This document shows, one piece after another, positions 16,917 through 45,880 of a DNA stretch of 64,000 nucleotides; the first letter of the stretch is position 1, and the number at the start of each line of letters is the position of its first letter. The position numbers were made by a program, and so were the translations under genes. The DNA lies in the IMG/VR virus record IMGVR_UViG_3300031669_000001, positions 186,001 to 250,000 of that record. The stretch is one strand, 5' to 3'. Under the pieces are notes generated by a model, which saw only the letters and a program-made list of their open reading frames with translations, did not search any database and had not been told where the DNA came from.

Positions 16917-16992
16917 TGGTCGCCCTGGAGGGATTCGAACCCTCGATCGCGATTTTAGAGATCGCAGCTTTACCGCTAAGCATTACAAGGCG
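16917..16992 (-). tRNA. amber suppressor tRNA (anticodon CTA)
   Basis: Acceptor CGCCTTG/CAGGGCG-A-CCA, anticodon arm GCGAT-CTCTAAA-ATCGC, T arm GAGGG-TTCGAAT-CCCTC. Confidence 0.88.
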
Positions 16993-35513: not shown

Positions 35514-36128
35514 TTATTCGCCGTCTTCCGGGAGACCTTGGCTAAACAGTCTATCGTAGTACTCTTTCGTCTTGATCTTAACCATAAAGTCATCACCTTT
35601 AGCGATGACACCTTCGAAGACTGGGTACTTGCCTTCGCGAACGTCATTGATGAATGACTTATTGAGGTTGCCCTCGTATATCACTTCAGCAGTTTCCGGC
35701 ATTGAGCCGTAGATGTCAACGAATTGTTTAGGAGGAACGAATCCCTTCTTAAACAGAAAAACGTCAAACAGCTTCAACTCCTTCGCTTCACCCTCGACGT
35801 GCTTTCCGGCAAAGCTTGACGGACCAAAAAGCTCGGTAAACGCTGTGATGCGCTCGGGCTTCTTGACTATCTGAGTCGTGCGGTAAACTATTTCATCTGC
35901 TAACTTTTCCATGAATATCGGAATTGCTTCGCAGAAGATTGGAGCGGAAGCGTCAAACATTTGGCGCCTGGTGCCGAATTTGTTCCAACCTTTCTTAGGA
36001 GACCACTCCCAGCGAAGGTTAGAACCGTCATACTTGTAGAAAGCGATGCATGATTTACCTAATGGAGCTTTTGAAGCACCTAAAATAGTTGGATATTGTA
36101 ACATTTTGATGCCTTTCATGTGGGTCAT
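35514..36128 (-). CDS. ATP-dependent RNA ligase-like nucleotidyltransferase
   Basis: KYDGSN (motif I), ELFG, LFDV, EGVIAK, KIK. Confidence 0.8.
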   Translation of the reverse strand: MTHMKGIKMLQYPTILGASKAPLGKSCIAFYKYDGSNLRWEWSPKKGWNKFGTRRQMFDASAPIFCEAIPIFMEKLADEIVYRTTQIVKKPERITAFTELFGPSSFAGKHVEGEAKELKLFDVFLFKKGFVPPKQFVDIYGSMPETAEVIYEGNLNKSFINDVREGKYPVFEGVIAKGDDFMVKIKTKEYYDRLFSQGLPEDGE

Positions 36129-36369: not shown

Positions 36370-36393
36370 GATGGTGATCTCCTATGTTATGTT

Positions 36394-36468
36394 TGGTGCA
36401 ATATGTTGGAATCGAACCAACCTTCCTGCAGTGTAGGTGCAGACGACAGCCACTCTCTTCAATATTGC
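36394..36468 (-). tRNA. tRNA-Val(TAC), C33
   Basis: CTGCA-CCTACAC-TGCAG, CCA. Confidence 0.75.
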
Positions 36469-36471
36469 GTG

Positions 36472-37196
36472 TGGTGCCCTCGGACGAGAATCGAACTGTC
36501 GACCTAATTGCCTTATCATTCGGCTAACGGTGCAATATATTCTTTATTGATTTGATTCAATGAGACTATTTTCAAATCAACACTGTTCTGTAATATAACT
36601 AATTCTATTTTCCTCGCATCAATCTTGGCAAGATAATCATTTTTCGTATCAAAATATTTGTCTCCAACTTTAAAATCAGGATAATATTTATGATCTATTC
36701 CATTATCGTCTATCCAAGGTAGCGGTGCAGGTCGTTCCCATATAATATTCAATTCTTCTAGAATCTGAGCAAATTTAATTTCATAAGAACTCTGAAGATA
36801 CACCTCAGTCCCGTCATTTTTCCTAAAATATAATTTCAGTTTAGATGTATGTCCACCTAAACCATTAGCTTTAGCTTTCTTAGATAAGTTGGCTTTAGAT
36901 TCATTTGTATGTATAGTACGCGTATGACCTTTTAACTTCTTACTACTTGCAAGACCATATTTAGTAACACGAGGGTCAGATTTATCTAATCCTTTATTCC
37001 ATGCTGACTTACCAGTCATACCATTTGTATACTTACGATCTGGGTTATCTTTGCATAGTCTTTCATGATTCCGTTGTGAATTAGTATTTTTACTCTCTTT
37101 ATTACAAAATTTACAAAATAGCATAAGTTTTCTCCTTAATACTATTTATAAATTATTTCTCAAAGTGAATTGCTCTACCGACTGAGCTACAAGGGC
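36472..37196 (-). pseudogene. tRNA (probably Thr) split by an endonuclease gene
   Basis: 5' half GCCCTTG-TA-GCTC..GAGC at about 37165-37196; 3' half T arm-CGAGGGC-A-CCA at 36472-36510. Confidence 0.75.
36516..37124 (-). CDS. putative homing endonuclease (zinc finger + PD-(D/E)xK domain)
   Basis: CxxC..H...C, AWNKG repeat, S.YE, YYPDF, DTK; TATAAATA upstream. Confidence 0.75.
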   Translation of the reverse strand: MLFCKFCNKESKNTNSQRNHERLCKDNPDRKYTNGMTGKSAWNKGLDKSDPRVTKYGLASSKKLKGHTRTIHTNESKANLSKKAKANGLGGHTSKLKLYFRKNDGTEVYLQSSYEIKFAQILEELNIIWERPAPLPWIDDNGIDHKYYPDFKVGDKYFDTKNDYLAKIDARKIELVILQNSVDLKIVSLNQINKEYIAPLAE

Positions 37197-37201
37197 GTTG
37201 A

Positions 37202-37276
37202 TGGTGCTCTGTGCTGGATTCGAACCAACTTCCACTTACTTACAAGGCAAGGCTTCACCGTCAAAGTTTACAGAGC
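37202..37276 (-). tRNA. tRNA-Thr(TGT)
   Basis: Cloverleaf, loop CTTGTAA, CCA. Confidence 0.85.
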
Positions 37277-37280
37277 ATCC

Positions 37281-37356
37281 AGGGGTGTCCAGACGGTTTC
37301 GAACCGTCACTACTCACTTCACAGGCGAGGGTGCAGACCACTACACTATGGACACC
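37281..37356 (-). tRNA. tRNA-His(GTG) with encoded G-1
   Basis: Loop CTGTGAA, C73. Confidence 0.85.
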
Positions 37357-37364
37357 ATTGATCT

Positions 37365-37472
37365 TACCCAAAGTAGGATTTGAACCTACATCTCCCCTTT
37401 TCTGTCTTCACGTGGTTTCCCATGCTCGCAAAGCTCTTACATAGAGTGCTCTACCATTGAAGCTATTCAGGT
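37365..37472 (-). ncRNA. tRNA-like RNA with an about 40-nt expanded anticodon region
   Basis: Acceptor ACCTGAA/TTTGGGT, canonical D arm and T arm, no CCA. Confidence 0.6.
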
Positions 37473-38881: not shown

Positions 38882-38981
38882 TGGTAGTCCCGCTCGGACT
38901 CGAACCGAGAATGTGCGCTAATCTGGCGCCACAGAGTGCCACTTTATAAGGGTGGTGTTTTACCAATTAAACTACAGGACC
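38882..38981 (-). tRNA. tRNA-Ile(TAT) with long variable arm
   Basis: GGTCCTG/CGGGACT, loop CTTATAA, CCA. Confidence 0.8.
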
Positions 38982-39634
38982 AGTAATTCTATAAATTCTT
39001 CATTGATTAAGTCATTTGAAAGAACAACCACTTTGATGTTGTTCATTTTCATTGCAGATTTAATCTTTCGTTCATCTTTCTTGATCAGATAATCATTTTT
39101 TGGATCAAGAAAGATGTTTTGTTTTGGTAAATAAAAGTCTGGTATATATCTTCGTTTCTTACCGTTATCGTTCCAAATATATCCTTGTCGAACTTTAATC
39201 CACTCAATATTAAGTGAGTCTAAAATTTCAGCAACTCTAACCTCGTATGAAGACTCCAAAATTACTCCAGGCTTATACTCGACGTTCTTAGAATACTTTG
39301 AATGTTTTGTTAACCGTTTGCAAGCAATGATTGAAAGTTTTTCCTTCGTTTCTTCACAATGTGGATGGGAAAATATATAACCCTCTTTTTCCATTTGCCT
39401 TTTTCTTTCATTTCCCCTTGCGCCTGCTATTCTTTGCTGTTCTGGATTATGAGATCTACTTTTATGACCAGCGCATCCTTGAGATGACGAAAATTCCTTA
39501 GAGCAAATTTCACATACCCATTTTGTTTTCTTCTCTACTTGTCCCTTACATACAGCAACATGCTTGTTAAAATTAGGAACACTAATTTGCCGAGAACATT
39601 TAGGGCAATCTTTTTTCTGTTTAGAACCGTGCAT
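38972..39634 (-). CDS. putative homing endonuclease (C2H2 zinc fingers + PD-(D/E)xK)
   Basis: CPKC..H...C, CEIC...H....H, SSYE, YIPDF, DPKNDY. Confidence 0.75.
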   Translation of the reverse strand: MHGSKQKKDCPKCSRQISVPNFNKHVAVCKGQVEKKTKWVCEICSKEFSSSQGCAGHKSRSHNPEQQRIAGARGNERKRQMEKEGYIFSHPHCEETKEKLSIIACKRLTKHSKYSKNVEYKPGVILESSYEVRVAEILDSLNIEWIKVRQGYIWNDNGKKRRYIPDFYLPKQNIFLDPKNDYLIKKDERKIKSAMKMNNIKVVVLSNDLINEEFIELLVL

Positions 39635-39902
39635 AATACAAAGATCCCGCCGCTCACCAAAGCTGAGTACTAACGTTATTTCTTCTGCGCATTTTCTCGA
39701 GATTGTCGTAAAGCATTAAATCTCGGAAAAGTATTAATGCTGGAACTGGAAGATTTCAGCGTTTCATTCAATAACGCGTTCTCTTCCTCTCGTGTGAAAG
39801 GTTTACCTTTCATATATGCTTCTTCTTTAGTTGTGAATTTCATTGGGTAATCTCCTTAAAGATGAATAATATCATCCTTTTTGAGATAAGTACATTATTC
39901 TC

Positions 39903-41630: not shown

Positions 41631-41704
41631 TGGTAGTCCCGGTCGGAATCGAACCGACGTGTTTCGCTAATCGGGCGAACACCTTACCATTAGATGACAG
41701 GACT
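41631..41704 (-). tRNA. tRNA-Ile(GAT), C33/U37
   Basis: Loop CCGATTA, CCA. Confidence 0.75.
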
Positions 41705-41716
41705 ACAACGATTGAA

Positions 41717-41787
41717 CGACATACGGGGAATCGAACCCGCGATCTCCGGCGTGAAGGCCAGGGTTTTGTCCGTTAAACTACACATCT
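41717..41787 (-). tRNA. Glu-like tRNA with a 6-nt anticodon loop (CTTCAC), no CCA
   Basis: D and T arms intact; stem CTGGC/GCCGG. Confidence 0.5.
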
Positions 41788-41870
41788 CAGATCTTTTTTC
41801 AAAACTTGCTGGAATCGATTAAAATCTGTCAATCGTGATCATATCCACGGCAGCAACCGCTTCAATAATT

Positions 41871-43681: not shown

Positions 43682-43756
43682 TGGTCCGCCCACGTGGAAT
43701 CGAACCACGGACCGGAGTTTAGAAGACTCCTGTTATATCCACTTAACTATGGGCAG
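43682..43756 (-). tRNA. tRNA-Arg(TCT)
   Basis: Loop CTTCTAA, CCA; 5' end overlaps the endonuclease stop codon. Confidence 0.88.
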
Positions 43757-44379
43757 AAACATTTTCTTCCTTTTGACCACCCTTGATCTAGGTAAGTCTG
43801 AAGAATATCTTTCTTGATCTTGATGGTTTTCTGTTGCTTTTCTGAGAAGATCCAGCAAGATCCAAATTGAGAGTTTCTATCACCGGATTGAGCAGATCTC
43901 ATTTTAGCTTTCGTATCTTCAGAGTGAGTCTTTCCGAACATCGGATTAGAGTCTGCTGAATTCAAATCGCTTAATTTTGCTCTTGATTCATATGAATGAG
44001 ATTTCCCTTGGAATTTTCCCTTGCCCATATTTGATTTTCTTGCAGCATTACTTGCATTGGACTCTATGCAGAACCCATTTCTTCTAATCTTTGTGATGTA
44101 TTCAAATCCACCGGTGCCGCCTCTTCTGAGGTTGTAGACATCATCACGAGAAAGAAACTCATCACTAACAATTTCTTTCTCCCTCGCATACATAGCTTCC
44201 GAATTCTCGAAAGTCTCAAGTATGACTTTTTCAAAGTTTTCGATCCCGTATCTTTTGATAGCACGACCGATAACTTTTCCAGAGCCCATGTACCCATCAT
44301 CAAAATTCTTGGTCTTATGAACTCCAACGTAGATTTTTCCATTCACCATGTTGGTGATTTGATAGATGCAATATTTCAT
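43747..44379 (-). CDS. GIY-YIG homing endonuclease (Seg-like) with NUMOD3 repeats
   Basis: CIY.ITN..NGKIYVG, YMGSG, YNL..GG.GG, GK.HS repeats. Confidence 0.9.
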   Translation of the reverse strand: MKYCIYQITNMVNGKIYVGVHKTKNFDDGYMGSGKVIGRAIKRYGIENFEKVILETFENSEAMYAREKEIVSDEFLSRDDVYNLRRGGTGGFEYITKIRRNGFCIESNASNAARKSNMGKGKFQGKSHSYESRAKLSDLNSADSNPMFGKTHSEDTKAKMRSAQSGDRNSQFGSCWIFSEKQQKTIKIKKDILQTYLDQGWSKGRKCFCP

Positions 44380-44408
44380 GCTTCTATTTATGGAGAATCC
44401 ACAACGTG

Positions 44409-44477
44409 TTGCGAACCCGGAATCGAACCGGCCTGATGGGTTATGAGCCCAACATGCGCCACTACATCTTTATCGCG
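44409..44477 (-). tRNA. initiator-like tRNA(CAT), atypical, no CCA
   Basis: C1xA72 mismatch, GGG/CCC anticodon stem. Confidence 0.6.
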
Positions 44478-45131: not shown

Positions 45132-45206
45132 TGGTACACCTGCAGGGAATCGAACCCTGTATTCCAGCTTGAAGGGCTGGCCACTCAACCAATTGTATTC
45201 AGGTGT
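45132..45206 (-). tRNA. tRNA-Glu(TTC), C33
   Basis: Loop CCTTCAA, CCA. Confidence 0.8.
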
Positions 45207-45209
45207 GCA

Positions 45210-45284
45210 AGGCTCCCCAGGCTGGATTCGAACCAACGACCAAGTGATTAACAGTCACCTACTCTACCACTGAGCTACTAGGGA
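45210..45284 (-). tRNA. tRNA-Asn(GTT)
   Basis: Loop CTGTTAA; overlaps the endonuclease stop codon. Confidence 0.88.
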
Positions 45285-45880
45285 ATTGTTACAAAATCTT
45301 TTGCTATTTGAATCCACTGTTTTGGATCTTTGTACATCTTTTGCCATTCTATTCTAAGTACTTTCCATCCAAAATCTTTCAAAAATTTATCTTTTCGTTC
45401 ATCACGTTCTCGATATTCTTGAAATCGTTTGTGTTGTTCACCGTCGATCTCAATGCAGAGACTTTTATGAACCCAGGCAAAGTCAAGAGAGAAGTTGCCT
45501 AAGGAATATTCGCGAACATAATTTTTATCTTCAAACTCGTTTTCGATAACTTTCATGAAAAACTTTTCTGGATAACTTGGCATGTTGTTCCACCGAGATT
45601 TACCAATATTCCAAGCTCGTCCTTCAGAATGAGCTTTCTTCATTGATTCGCTTGTTAGCTGTTTAGTTTTGGAAGAAGGAATATGACCAGGTTTTCCCTT
45701 AAGTGCGATAGAAATTTTATTGGACATCTTCCAGATTCTTGGATCAGATTTATTCAAACCTTTAGTCCAAGAATCTTTACCAGCAAAGGGTTTATGATCT
45801 TTACCAGAACCGTGTGTTCTCCAAATATGAGTTCCAATACCCATTTTAGAAAATTCTTTATCGCAAAATGTACATTTCAT
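45278..45880 (-). CDS. putative homing endonuclease (zinc finger + DUF559/Vsr-like domain)
   Basis: CxxC..H....H, S.PE, DFAW, IEIDG.QH, RD..KD, GW.VLR; start set to MKCTFC. Confidence 0.8.
   Translation of the reverse strand: MKCTFCDKEFSKMGIGTHIWRTHGSGKDHKPFAGKDSWTKGLNKSDPRIWKMSNKISIALKGKPGHIPSSKTKQLTSESMKKAHSEGRAWNIGKSRWNNMPSYPEKFFMKVIENEFEDKNYVREYSLGNFSLDFAWVHKSLCIEIDGEQHKRFQEYRERDERKDKFLKDFGWKVLRIEWQKMYKDPKQWIQIAKDFVTIP

What the first reader, a model, noticed from the sequence alone, without database searches (positions are those of the whole stretch)
36472..37196. Second split tRNA around a related endonuclease, with a remnant replacement 5' end
Seen: 5' half GCCCTTG..GAGC-AATTCACT, then a late promoter and an endonuclease of the same type as 38972-39634 (shared S.YE, Y.PDF, D.KNDYL). 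The ORF end overlaps a foreign acceptor/D-arm segment (GCACCGT-TA-GCC-GAATGATAA-GGC) fused directly to the resident 3' half. Inference: the same strategy, with the replacement tRNA later truncated; three other Thr anticodons are present nearby.
Basis: partly seen in the sequence, partly recalled or inferred. Interest (0 to 1): 0.6.

Follow-up and report, generated by a model that had tools for sequence, protein, structure and literature searches.

The report
tRNA-Thr gene split by homing endonuclease
A threonine tRNA gene in a 345-kb phage has been cut in two at its anticodon by a selfish endonuclease gene, which normally carries a spare tRNA of the same kind but here brought only that tRNA's first 25 bases, so this copy is dead.

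Summary
On the minus strand, 37196-37164 is the first 33 nt of a tRNA and 36508-36472 is its variable loop, T arm and acceptor 3' strand. The two acceptor strands pair 7/7. In the closest relatives (L002, L003) both pieces lie in one unsplit tRNA-Thr(UGU)-like gene in the same syntenic slot.

Between them lie TATAAATA, a Shine-Dalgarno site and an intact 202-aa ORF: a zinc finger plus a T7-endonuclease-I-like PD-(D/E)xK nuclease, GC-poor, and paralogous to ORF 39634-38972. Its last six codons and stop lie in a 25-nt second tRNA 5' segment (acceptor and D arm). That segment does not pair with the resident 3' strand. About six resident nucleotides, including the anticodon, are missing, so no functional tRNA can form. 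Two intact tRNA-Thr(UGU) genes cover the loss.

The nuclease family behaves the same way elsewhere. In about 18 of 23 loci, including cultured phages PhaxI and IME341, the ORF stops inside a downstream tRNA. Most loci keep a tRNA 5'-half remnant upstream. Two comparisons of HEG-plus and HEG-minus phages show a cassette of nuclease plus a whole isoacceptor tRNA overwriting a resident tRNA.

This locus is therefore an incomplete copy of such a cassette. I found no description of the architecture in the searchable literature.

The parts
37164..37196 (-). Resident tRNA-Thr 5' half: acceptor GCCCTTG, D arm, 5' strand of the anticodon stem (ATTCA) and CT of the loop. The break lies at or just after position 33-36.
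   Evidence: Sequence. Truncated Rfam tRNA hit, 22.1 bits, E=0.0028, model 1-32. Collinear with L002 2829-2862 at 88.6%, including 10 nt of upstream flank. The tested 21-nt core is identical to a widespread bacterial tRNA-Thr(CGU) type, and the shared stretch reads as 26-27 nt in the loci shown.
37143..37150 (-). TATAAATA, an exact T4-type late-promoter consensus, 18 nt before the ATG.
   Evidence: Five copies in the window, all on the minus strand, against 1.2 expected. 23 on the minus strand and 2 on the plus strand genome-wide. ATAAATA recurs 15-40 nt upstream of about 10 of 19 family members in unrelated phages. Function is inferred, not shown.
37132..37137 (-). Shine-Dalgarno sequence AAGGAG, 7 nt before the ATG.
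   Evidence: Sequence.
36516..37124 (-). Free-standing homing-endonuclease-like gene, 202 aa: N-terminal C2H2-type zinc finger, helical linker, C-terminal PD-(D/E)xK nuclease with E115, D150, D159 and K161.
   Evidence: ORF. PHROG endonuclease families. Family profile vs T7 endonuclease I 1M0D, E=6e-8, catalytic motifs aligned. Pfam Phage_endo_I in 2 of 6 members. AlphaFold model with pLDDT 89.7, best Foldseek hits TnsA and other PD-(D/E)xK nucleases. GC 0.32-0.35 against 0.43 for the genome. Absent from L002-L005 at this site.
36509..36533 (-). Second (cassette-borne) tRNA 5' segment: acceptor strand GCACCGT, TA, D arm GCC(G)-AATGATA-(A)GGC, A26. It encodes the nuclease's last six codons and holds its TGA stop (36518-36516).
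   Evidence: Only Rfam hit for this stretch is tRNA, model 1-25, 11.3 bits, E=2, weak. It pairs 3/7 with the 3' acceptor strand. No similarity to L002/L003. By analogy, about 18 of 23 family loci end inside a tRNA 5' end. D loop AATGATA matches the HEG-linked tRNA of L047.
36472..36508 (-). Resident tRNA-Thr 3' part: probably the last 2-3 nt of the anticodon stem (AAT), variable loop AGGTC, T arm GACAG-TTCGATT-CT(C)GTC with a 1-nt bulge, acceptor CGAGGGC, ACCA. The exact start is uncertain within 36508-36505.
   Evidence: Aligns to L002 2885-2916 and L003 2357-2390 at 90.6-91.2%, collinear with the 5' half and both flanks. The same bulged T stem occurs in L002/L003. Comparison with the bacterial Thr type ..TGAAT-AGGTC... 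Not recognised as tRNA when searched alone.
37202..37276 (-). Intact tRNA-Thr(UGU) 5 nt upstream of the split gene. It is a context feature that makes the loss tolerable.
   Evidence: ARAGORN. Rfam 40 bits. A further Thr(UGU) lies at 43125-43052.

Best explanation
This is the scar of a mobile homing-endonuclease cassette that landed in the anticodon loop of a resident phage tRNA-Thr gene.

The cassette consists of a TATAAATA late-type promoter, a ribosome-binding site and a 202-aa nuclease gene (zinc finger plus a T7-endonuclease-I-like PD-(D/E)xK domain). It also includes the start of the tRNA gene that such cassettes normally carry. In this nuclease family the ORF has no stop codon of its own. 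It reads into the 5' end of a downstream tRNA gene and stops there.

A complete cassette overwrites the 3' two-thirds of a resident tRNA with the nuclease gene plus a sequence-divergent tRNA of the same anticodon. That tRNA is presumably immune to cleavage. The resident 5' half is left upstream, where it can serve as a homology arm.

Here only the first 25 nt of the cassette's tRNA are present, enough to keep the nuclease's C-terminus and stop codon. They are joined straight to the resident 3' part, and about six resident nucleotides (anticodon positions and the start of the 3' stem strand) are lost. Neither the resident nor the replacement tRNA can therefore be made. Two other tRNA-Thr(UGU) genes supply the function.

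Shown: the anatomy, the single-gene state in relatives, the nuclease fold and catalytic residues, and the family-wide tRNA linkage.

Inferred: that the nuclease cleaves intact alleles of a tRNA gene and spreads by double-strand-break repair, that the motif is a promoter, and that the truncation arose at insertion rather than later.
For: Split of one gene:
- Collinear alignment places window 37206-37173 and 36501-36470 on L002 2829-2862 and 2885-2916. They are 22 nt apart there and 672 nt apart here. The flanking tRNA-Thr(cgt) and the small ORF are also collinear.
- The unsplit L003 gene scores 52.8 bits as tRNA and has anticodon loop CTTGTAA.
- Acceptor strands pair 7/7.

Mobile nuclease:
- Present here but absent at this site in the nearest relatives.
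- The GC content dips over the ORF.
- There are four family matches in this genome (this gene plus three paralogues), at least three in tRNA arrays.
- The family profile matches T7 endonuclease I at E=6e-8, with E/PD/(D,E)xK conserved in 54 sequences.
- The predicted fold is PD-(D/E)xK.

Family rule:
- The ORF stop lies 6-38 nt inside a same-strand tRNA in about 18 of 23 loci.
- Upstream 5'-half remnants end at the anticodon loop. Their anticodon equals that of the downstream tRNA in 9 of about 12 readable cases.
- PhaxI vs S8: the resident tRNA-Met keeps its first 27 nt, followed by the nuclease gene and a different tRNA-Met.
- IME341 vs TP3: the same arrangement for tRNA-Arg(UCU).
- The nuclease is rare among otherwise near-identical phages. 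Only 6 of 265 Kuttervirus-like and 3 of 728 T4-like records cover the region.
- Nuclease clades follow tRNA identity.

Dead tRNA:
- No caller finds a tRNA here.
- The second acceptor strand pairs 3/7.
- The anticodon arm is absent.
Against: - No cleavage or mobility has been measured for any member of this family. The target of this particular nuclease is unknown.
- Its nearest relative (L031, 57% identity) sits before a Val(UAC)-like tRNA, not a Thr gene.
- The tRNA ancestry of the 25-nt segment rests on a weak score (E=2) plus analogy with the family.
- The L002/L003 gene has two U.U acceptor mismatches and a bulged T stem, and ARAGORN does not call it. The lineage may already have been degenerating before the insertion.
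- The window comes from a single metagenome assembly, and I could not check reads.
Confidence: 0.8

Rival explanations
1. One reading: a complete replacement tRNA was installed with the nuclease gene, as in the family norm. It later lost its anticodon arm and everything downstream by deletion.
For: Complete cassettes are the rule in the family. Hairpins and closely spaced tRNA-like repeats are prone to deletion (general knowledge).
Against: The resident 3' part begins almost where the resident 5' half ends, with only about six nt missing. A later deletion would have had to end exactly at the old cassette/resident junction. In the two resolved cases the resident 3' part is not retained at all.
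Confidence: 0.3
2. A functional split tRNA: the two halves are transcribed separately and assembled or ligated, perhaps by the RNA-ligase-like protein encoded 350 nt downstream. This would resemble Nanoarchaeum split tRNAs or repair of anticodon-nuclease damage.
For: Acceptor complementarity is fully preserved. An RNA-ligase-like ORF at 36128-35514 is conserved beside the array.
Against: The anticodon and part of the anticodon stem are missing from the DNA. There is no complementarity between the sequence after the 5' half and the sequence before the 3' half beyond shuffled controls: -11.2 kcal/mol against a mean of -13.6. The 3' part is fused to a non-pairing foreign segment. Intact isoacceptors exist.
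Confidence: 0.03
3. An intron: the 650-nt insert is a group I or group II intron with an internal endonuclease ORF in the anticodon loop, as in cyanobacterial tRNA-fMet and tRNA-Leu. It would be spliced out to give a normal tRNA.
For: The position in the anticodon loop and the presence of an endonuclease ORF resemble tRNA group I introns.
Against: No Rfam intron family matches at E<=10. Only about 40 nt lie before the ORF and 0-10 nt after it, which leaves no room for a ribozyme core. Exon nucleotides are missing. Family members sit between tRNA genes, not inside them.
Confidence: 0.02
4. Coincidence: two unrelated tRNA fragments or degenerate tRNA genes happen to flank an endonuclease gene in a dense tRNA array.
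For: The array is full of tRNA-like sequence, and several other degenerate tRNA-like pieces exist in the window.
Against: 7/7 acceptor pairing (p about 0.001). Both pieces map collinearly to one gene in two relatives at the same syntenic position.
Confidence: 0.02

Closest known systems
SegB of phage T4 (GIY-YIG) and the F-Tfl HNH endonucleases of T5: free-standing homing endonucleases inside phage tRNA clusters (PMC2330249; PMC13096335; T5 cited in PMC10644984)
   Same: A free-standing nuclease gene within a phage tRNA array. The target is a tRNA gene of related phages that lack the nuclease. Presence/absence polymorphism occurs among close relatives. SegB homologues are reported to be frequently next to tRNAs.
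   Different: The nuclease fold differs (PD-(D/E)xK, T7-endonuclease-I-like, with an N-terminal zinc finger). SegB recognises the T-loop motif and sits between genes. Here the ORF terminates inside a tRNA, a tRNA 5' half is left upstream, and at this locus the tRNA is physically split. No cleavage data exist for this family.
T7 endonuclease I and PD-(D/E)xK homing endonucleases (I-Ssp6803I in a tRNA-fMet intron; I-Bth0305I)
   Same: Catalytic E...PD...(D/E)xK motifs align to T7 endonuclease I. I-Bth0305I appears among the fold matches. From my own knowledge, I-Ssp6803I also targets a tRNA gene at the anticodon loop.
   Different: T7 endonuclease I is a structure-specific junction resolvase without a zinc finger. 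I-Ssp6803I is intron-encoded, whereas this gene is free-standing with no ribozyme.
Genes in pieces created by homing-endonuclease insertion ('fractured genes' with split inteins, PMC2677866; Aeh1 nrdA split by mobE, from my own knowledge)
   Same: An endonuclease gene lies between the two halves of a host gene.
   Different: Those are protein genes that stay functional through split inteins or subunit assembly. Here it is an RNA gene, nucleotides are lost, and no reassembly route is visible.
tRNA-gene-targeting integrative elements (prophages, genomic islands) that carry a replacement tRNA 3' end in attP (from my own knowledge)
   Same: A mobile element disrupts a tRNA gene but brings tRNA sequence that restores an intact gene. 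A partial tRNA duplicate is left at the other border, and the crossover is often in the anticodon loop.
   Different: Those use an integrase with site-specific recombination, and the element supplies the tRNA 3' part. Here a homing endonuclease is involved, presumably with double-strand-break repair. The cassette supplies a whole isoacceptor tRNA, and the leftover is a 5' half.
Fungal mitochondrial free-standing endonuclease genes that bring a replacement gene terminus and displace the resident one (e.g. Allomyces atp6; from my own knowledge)
   Same: The endonuclease gene travels with a substitute piece of the gene it invades. The resident piece remains as a pseudogene fragment.
   Different: Protein-coding genes with in-frame fusions, in a different nuclease family and a different host system.
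Split tRNA genes of Nanoarchaeum equitans
   Same: The 5' and 3' halves are separated at the anticodon loop.
   Different: Those have complementary leader and trailer sequences and a splicing endonuclease, and both halves are complete. None of this holds here.

Membership tests
Free-standing homing endonuclease gene (HEG) | Encodes a nuclease of a recognised HEG-type fold with intact catalytic residues. | tested here: met
   The profile matches T7 endonuclease I at E=6e-8. E115, D150 and K161 are invariant and D159 is conserved in at least 90% of 54 sequences. The model has pLDDT 89.7 with PD-(D/E)xK fold matches.
Free-standing homing endonuclease gene (HEG) | Sporadic presence or absence at an otherwise conserved locus in close relatives. 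| tested here: met
   Absent at this slot in L002, L003, L004 and L005. Family members are present in only 6 of 265 and 3 of 728 related cultured-phage records.
Free-standing homing endonuclease gene (HEG) | Site-specific cleavage of the HEG-less allele, with unidirectional transfer in mixed infection. | not testable with these tools
   This needs enzyme assays or co-infection experiments. I found no published data for this family.
T7 endonuclease I-like PD-(D/E)xK nucleases (Pfam PF05367) | The E...PD...(D/E)xK motif in the canonical order within an alpha/beta core. | tested here: met
   HMM alignment to 1M0D covers the motifs. PF05367 is hit by 2 of 6 members, but not by this protein alone. 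Best Foldseek hits are TnsA (E=7e-3, probability 1.0) and other PD-(D/E)xK nucleases. T7 endonuclease I itself is not among the top hits, perhaps because it is a domain-swapped dimer.
Split tRNA gene (both halves derived from one tRNA) | The halves are complementary in the acceptor stem and correspond to one gene in relatives. | tested here: met
   7/7 pairing. One collinear gene in L002/L003 scoring 52.8 bits as tRNA.
Functional split tRNA (Nanoarchaeum type) | The halves are complete, and complementary flanking leaders allow assembly and splicing. | tested here: not met
   The anticodon and part of the stem are missing. Flank complementarity is no better than in shuffles.
Group I or group II intron in a tRNA anticodon loop | A ribozyme core is recognisable and the exons are complete. 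| tested here: not met
   No intron family matches at E<=10 over 36380-37300. About 40 nt of non-coding insert lie before the ORF and essentially none after it.
Complete HEG-plus-isoacceptor-tRNA cassette (the arrangement seen in PhaxI, IME341, L036, L047 and others) | The nuclease ORF stops inside an intact downstream tRNA with the same anticodon as the upstream remnant. | tested here: not met
   The ORF does stop inside a tRNA-like 5' segment, but that tRNA ends after position 25-26 and has no anticodon arm. The locus is a truncated derivative of the arrangement.

The most novel reading that the evidence does not exclude
The locus is a broken example of a widespread mobile-element architecture that I could not find described. 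It has four parts.

1. A family of zinc-finger plus T7-endonuclease-I-like homing endonucleases has its C-terminus and stop codon encoded by the 5' end of a tRNA gene that travels with it.
2. The cassette overwrites a resident tRNA of the same anticodon with a divergent copy that is presumably resistant to cleavage.
3. It leaves the resident 5' half upstream as a homology arm.
4. Nuclease lineages co-diverge with tRNA identity.

One consequence is untested. RNase P processing of the tRNA would remove the nuclease mRNA's stop codon, which would couple nuclease expression to tRNA maturation and non-stop mRNA decay.
Probability: 0.45. Interest if true: 0.7.

Novelty: new variant of a known kind. 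Interest (0 to 1): 0.55.

Why it matters
Phage tRNA arrays are now seen as counter-defence cargo against tRNA-cleaving host immunity. SegB-type endonucleases have recently been shown to remodel them (PMC13096335).

This locus, together with the family survey it prompted, points to a second, structurally different endonuclease family. That family edits tRNA repertoires by swapping a resident tRNA for a divergent isoacceptor. At this locus the swap failed and a tRNA gene was simply destroyed.

The finding gives three practical things:
- an explanation for the orphan tRNA halves that annotation pipelines miss or miscall;
- a possible source of sequence-divergent, perhaps nuclease-resistant, tRNA alleles;
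- an experimentally tractable system in cultured phages, namely PhaxI against HEG-less Kuttervirus and IME341 against other T4-like phages.

The family is large: 225 clusters at 50% identity at E<=1e-30.

Tried and rejected
- Near-identity DNA search of the locus against 50,697 phage records found no match.
- Exact-pattern scans of IMG/VR with the 5' half, the 3' half and the neighbouring tRNA-Val found no matches. No closer relative than L002-L005 is available.
- The one metagenome scan, with a 21-nt core of the 5' half, was saturated by bacterial tRNA-Thr(CGU) genes (120 rows, 106 of that type). Apart from the window's own contig it returned no phage allele. It did show what the missing nucleotides should be.
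No read-level or RNA evidence could be obtained, and read laying was not used.
- The 3' part searched alone is not recognised by the Rfam tRNA model.
- The group I/II intron reading was rejected.
- The Nanoarchaeum-type assembly reading was rejected.
- NCBIfam has no model for the nuclease. Pfam hits this protein only through a weak zinc-finger match.
- Foldseek against the PDB gave only weak E-values (best 7e-3), though the hits were consistently PD-(D/E)xK.
- I did not build or search a joined 5'+3' tRNA model. The halves were searched separately by reference and co-folded as two strands in a local script.
- Literature searches found SegB and T5 F-Tfl but nothing on this family or on tRNA 5'-half remnants. 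One further search failed on syntax. Only open-licence PMC papers and bioRxiv were searchable, so absence is not proof.
Full report
**Setting.** The window is bases 186001-250000 of a 345,069-bp IMG/VR phage record with direct terminal repeats. Its minus strand carries a dense tRNA array, with 42 ARAGORN calls and a few more found by Rfam. Several endonuclease genes are interspersed.

**The observation.** Everything below is on the minus strand.
- 37196-37164 reads GCCCTTG-TA-GCTC-AGTCGGTA-GAGC-A-ATTCA-CT. Searched on its own, it is a 3'-truncated tRNA hit of 22.1 bits, E=0.0028, model positions 1-32.
- TATAAATA follows at 37150-37143, then AAGGAG at 37137-37132.
- A 202-aa ORF runs from 37124 to 36516.
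- The last six codons and the TGA stop lie in GCACCGT-TA-GCC(G)-AATGATA-(A)GGC-A at 36533-36509. The Rfam tRNA model aligns this to positions 1-25. It is the only family reported for that stretch, but the hit is weak at 11.3 bits, E=2.
- Directly after it come (AAT)T-AGGTC-GACAG-TTCGATT-CT(C)GTC-CGAGGGC-ACCA, ending at 36472. The next gene, tRNA-Val(UAC), starts at 36468.
- No caller finds a complete tRNA between 36468 and 37202.

**Are the two ends one gene?** Yes.
- The 5' acceptor strand GCCCTTG pairs with CGAGGGC at all seven positions (one G.U). Only 0.12% of random 7-mers from the window do as well. The second acceptor-like strand GCACCGT pairs at three positions.
- I fetched relatives through the conserved RNA-ligase-like neighbour at 36128-35514.
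- The two closest relatives (L002 and L003, 87% identity in that protein) have a single 75-76-nt gene in the same slot, after tRNA-Thr(cgt) and tRNA-His and before the small ORF and the ligase. The L003 copy reads GCCCTTGTAACTCAGTGGTAGAGTGCTAACCTTGTAAGTTAGAAGTCGACAGTTCGATTCTAGTCCTTGGGCACCA.
- That gene scores 52.8 bits against the Rfam tRNA model and has anticodon loop CTTGTAA, that is Thr UGU.
- blastn places window 37206-37173 on L002 2829-2862 (88.6%) and window 36501-36470 on L002 2885-2916 (90.6%). The order is collinear with both flanks. The pieces are 22 nt apart in L002 and 672 nt apart in the window.
- The odd one-nucleotide bulge in the T stem is shared.
- L004 and L005 (82%) have a canonical tRNA-Thr(tgt) in this slot and no endonuclease.

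**What exactly is missing.**
- A 21-nt core of the 5' half is identical to a very common bacterial tRNA-Thr(CGU) type, and the shared stretch reads as 26-27 nt in the loci shown. That type continues ...ATTCA-CTCGTAA-TGAAT-AGGTC....
- Against this template the window keeps ...ATTCA-CT(T) on the left and AAT(T)-AGGTC... on the right.
- The resident gene has therefore lost only about six nucleotides: anticodon positions, 37-38, and the start of the 3' stem strand.
- The insert is roughly 37163-36509.
- The T after CT, the L002/L003 orthologue and the G1-C72/C2-G71 pairs all fit threonine identity.

**The inserted gene.**
- The ORF is 40% identical over its C-terminal 96 residues to ORF 39634-38972 (E=8e-19), with SSYE, YxPDF and DxKNDYL shared.
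- A family profile matches T7 endonuclease I (1M0D) at E=6e-8, with the E, PD and (D/E)xK motifs aligned.
- Pfam Phage_endo_I is hit by two of six members.
- C4, C7, E115, D150 and K161 are invariant in 54 sequences, and D159 is nearly so.
- An AlphaFold model (pLDDT 89.7) shows an N-terminal zinc-finger hairpin and helix, two linker helices and an alpha/beta nuclease domain. Its best structural matches are TnsA and other PD-(D/E)xK nucleases, including a homing-endonuclease catalytic domain and the R2 retrotransposon protein.
- The ORF region has GC 0.32-0.35, against 0.43 for the genome.
- Four matches to the family exist in this genome, and at least three lie in tRNA arrays.
- These are the marks of a free-standing homing endonuclease gene. 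No activity has been measured.

**The family rule.** I collected 23 distinct loci with homologues from IMG/VR, GenBank phages and other assemblies.
- In about 18 of the 23, the ORF's stop codon lies 6-38 nt inside a same-strand tRNA gene. The stop is often the U8-A9-G10 TAG, or a TAA in an A/T-rich D arm.
- Most loci also carry a tRNA 5' half just upstream of the start codon, and it breaks off in the anticodon loop. Examples are ...CTGAT|, ...TTGATC| and ...CTTCT|.
- In 9 of about 12 readable cases the remnant's anticodon equals that of the intact tRNA downstream.
- ATAAATA or TATAAATA follows the remnant in about 10 of 19 loci.
- A tree of the nucleases groups them by linked tRNA. All six Ile-GAT cases form one clade (SH-aLRT 97) and the Ile-UAU cases another (99). 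The window's gene pairs with L031 (97), which precedes a Val(UAC)-like tRNA.
- The family is large: 225 clusters at 50% identity at E<=1e-30, and 4,166 at E<=1e-10.

**Two natural before-and-after comparisons.**
- *Kuttervirus.* Salmonella phage S8 has one tRNA-Met(CAT). PhaxI keeps the upstream flank and the first 27 nt of that gene at 99.5% identity. It then has the endonuclease gene and a quite different tRNA-Met(CAT) that overlaps the ORF end by 10 nt. Homology to S8 resumes just after the S8 tRNA. Only 6 of 265 matching records span the nuclease.
- *T4-like phages.* Typing phage 3 has tRNA-Met followed by tRNA-Arg(UCU). IME341 has tRNA-Met, a remnant ending ...GTCAACTTCT, the endonuclease gene, and a different tRNA-Arg(UCU) that overlaps the ORF by 38 nt. 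From memory, its sequence matches T4's own tRNA-Arg.
- The complete cassette is thus nuclease plus a whole isoacceptor tRNA, and it overwrites the 3' two-thirds of the resident gene.

**Reading of this locus.**
- The left junction, in the anticodon loop, is typical of the family. The right side is not.
- Only the first 25-26 nt of a second tRNA are present, and they abut the resident 3' part.
- The retained 25 nt are just what the nuclease needs to keep its last six codons and its stop.
- The resident gene lost only about six nucleotides, and the second tRNA ends exactly at the junction. One route would be repair synthesis that stopped inside the donor's tRNA and was end-joined. The data cannot decide between the two.
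- Either way, neither tRNA can be made.
- tRNA-Thr(UGU) genes at 37276-37202 and 43125-43052 remain intact.
- With resident sequence now on both sides, this allele could in principle home into intact copies of the gene in related phages and inactivate them. That is inference.

**Rivals.**
- *Intron.* Excluded by the absence of any ribozyme match and of space for one.
- *Trans-assembled split tRNA.* Contradicted by the missing anticodon and by flank complementarity no better than in shuffles. The neighbouring RNA-ligase-like gene is more simply part of the tRNA-repair and counter-defence equipment of such phages.
- *Chance juxtaposition.* Excluded.

**Promoter.**
- TATAAATA occurs five times in the window, all on the coding strand, against 1.2 expected.
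- Genome-wide it occurs 23 times on the minus strand and twice on the plus strand, while a reversed control motif occurs 9 and 10 times.
- By eye from their N-terminal sequences, about five of the 19 ORFs that follow it look like homing endonucleases.
- The motif is a plausible cassette-borne, T4-late-type promoter. Its use in this phage is not shown.

**Known relatives and novelty.**
- Free-standing homing endonucleases in phage tRNA clusters that cut tRNA genes are known. Examples are T4 SegB, which recognises the T loop (PMC2330249) and was recently shown to drive tRNA-locus amplification (PMC13096335), and the T5 F-Tfl enzymes (cited in PMC10644984).
- Three features appear to be new: the nuclease family, the ORF terminating inside a tRNA, and the cassette that replaces an isoacceptor and leaves a 5' half.
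- Six literature searches found no description, within the limits of an open-access corpus.
- I file the locus as a new variant of a known kind.

**Limits.**
- The genome is a single metagenome assembly.
- No enzyme data exist for this family.
- The tRNA origin of the 25-nt segment is supported mainly by analogy.
The halves were handled separately by reference.

Noticed in passing
window 38885-39675 (-): The paralogous endonuclease (39634-38972) ends with TAG inside a 97-nt tRNA-Ile(UAU)-like gene (38981-38885). Rfam scores that gene at 54.9 bits, and ARAGORN does not call it. A D-arm-like remnant (..CTCAGCTTTGGTGAGCGGCGGGATCT) lies just upstream of the ATG. The relative L004 has the Ile(tat) gene directly after tRNA-Phe, with no endonuclease.
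   Followed up: partly
window 38885-38981 (-); L004 8367-8459; L018 1620-1714; L051 2034-2128: tRNA-Ile(UAU) genes of 93-97 nt with a long variable arm recur in these large phages. Type-II-like architecture is unusual for isoleucine tRNAs.
   Followed up: no
window 45278-45880 (-): A different endonuclease has the same kind of N-terminal zinc finger but a DUF559/Vsr-like C-terminal domain. It sits between two tRNA-Asn(gtt) genes (46011-45918 and 45284-45211), and its TAG stop lies in the acceptor stem of the second.
   Followed up: partly
window 43747-44476 (-): A GIY-YIG endonuclease gene (44379-43747) stops at the U8-A9-G10 TAG of tRNA-Arg(tct) (43756-43682). Upstream lie ATAAATAG and a degenerate tRNA-like sequence with a CAT loop (44476-44410, Rfam 24.6 bits). 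Stopping inside the next tRNA is therefore not limited to one nuclease family in this array.
   Followed up: partly
window 37360-37470 (-): A tRNA-like sequence with a pairing acceptor stem (ACCTGAA/TTTGGGT), a D arm and a T arm, but about 44 extra nucleotides after the anticodon arm. Neither ARAGORN nor the Rfam tRNA model calls it. There is a weak YrlA-like hit nearby, and its fold is no more stable than shuffles. It is unexplained.
   Followed up: partly
window 16917-16992 (-); L009 and L016 5953-6026: A tRNA with anticodon CUA (called 'Pyl' by ARAGORN), that is an amber-suppressor-type tRNA. It is conserved in some relatives and could indicate TAG reassignment or suppression. I used the standard code throughout, and the ORFs studied are open under it.
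   Followed up: no
window 35514-36128 (-): An RNA-ligase-like ORF (phrog_548, E=7.5e-6) is conserved next to the tRNA array in all 16 related loci. Relatives L004, L005, L009 and L016 also encode a tmRNA.
   Followed up: no
G000:C1 318324-318929 (-), outside the window (L026 1375-1980): A further paralogue of the endonuclease lies in a second tRNA array (Leu/Tyr/Ser/Trp) of the same genome. It does not overlap a tRNA; the gap to tRNA-Ser is 199 nt.
   Followed up: partly
window 41716-41789, 41634-41704, 45135-45206 (-): The tRNA callers disagree here. ARAGORN reports a tRNA with a 2-nt anticodon. Rfam finds two tRNAs that ARAGORN misses.
   Followed up: no
L029 (PhaxI) 1465-1500: In PhaxI the space between the tRNA remnant and the endonuclease start holds a perfect hairpin (AGTAATACCA...TGGTATTACT) instead of the TATAAATA motif seen in most other cassettes.
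   Followed up: no
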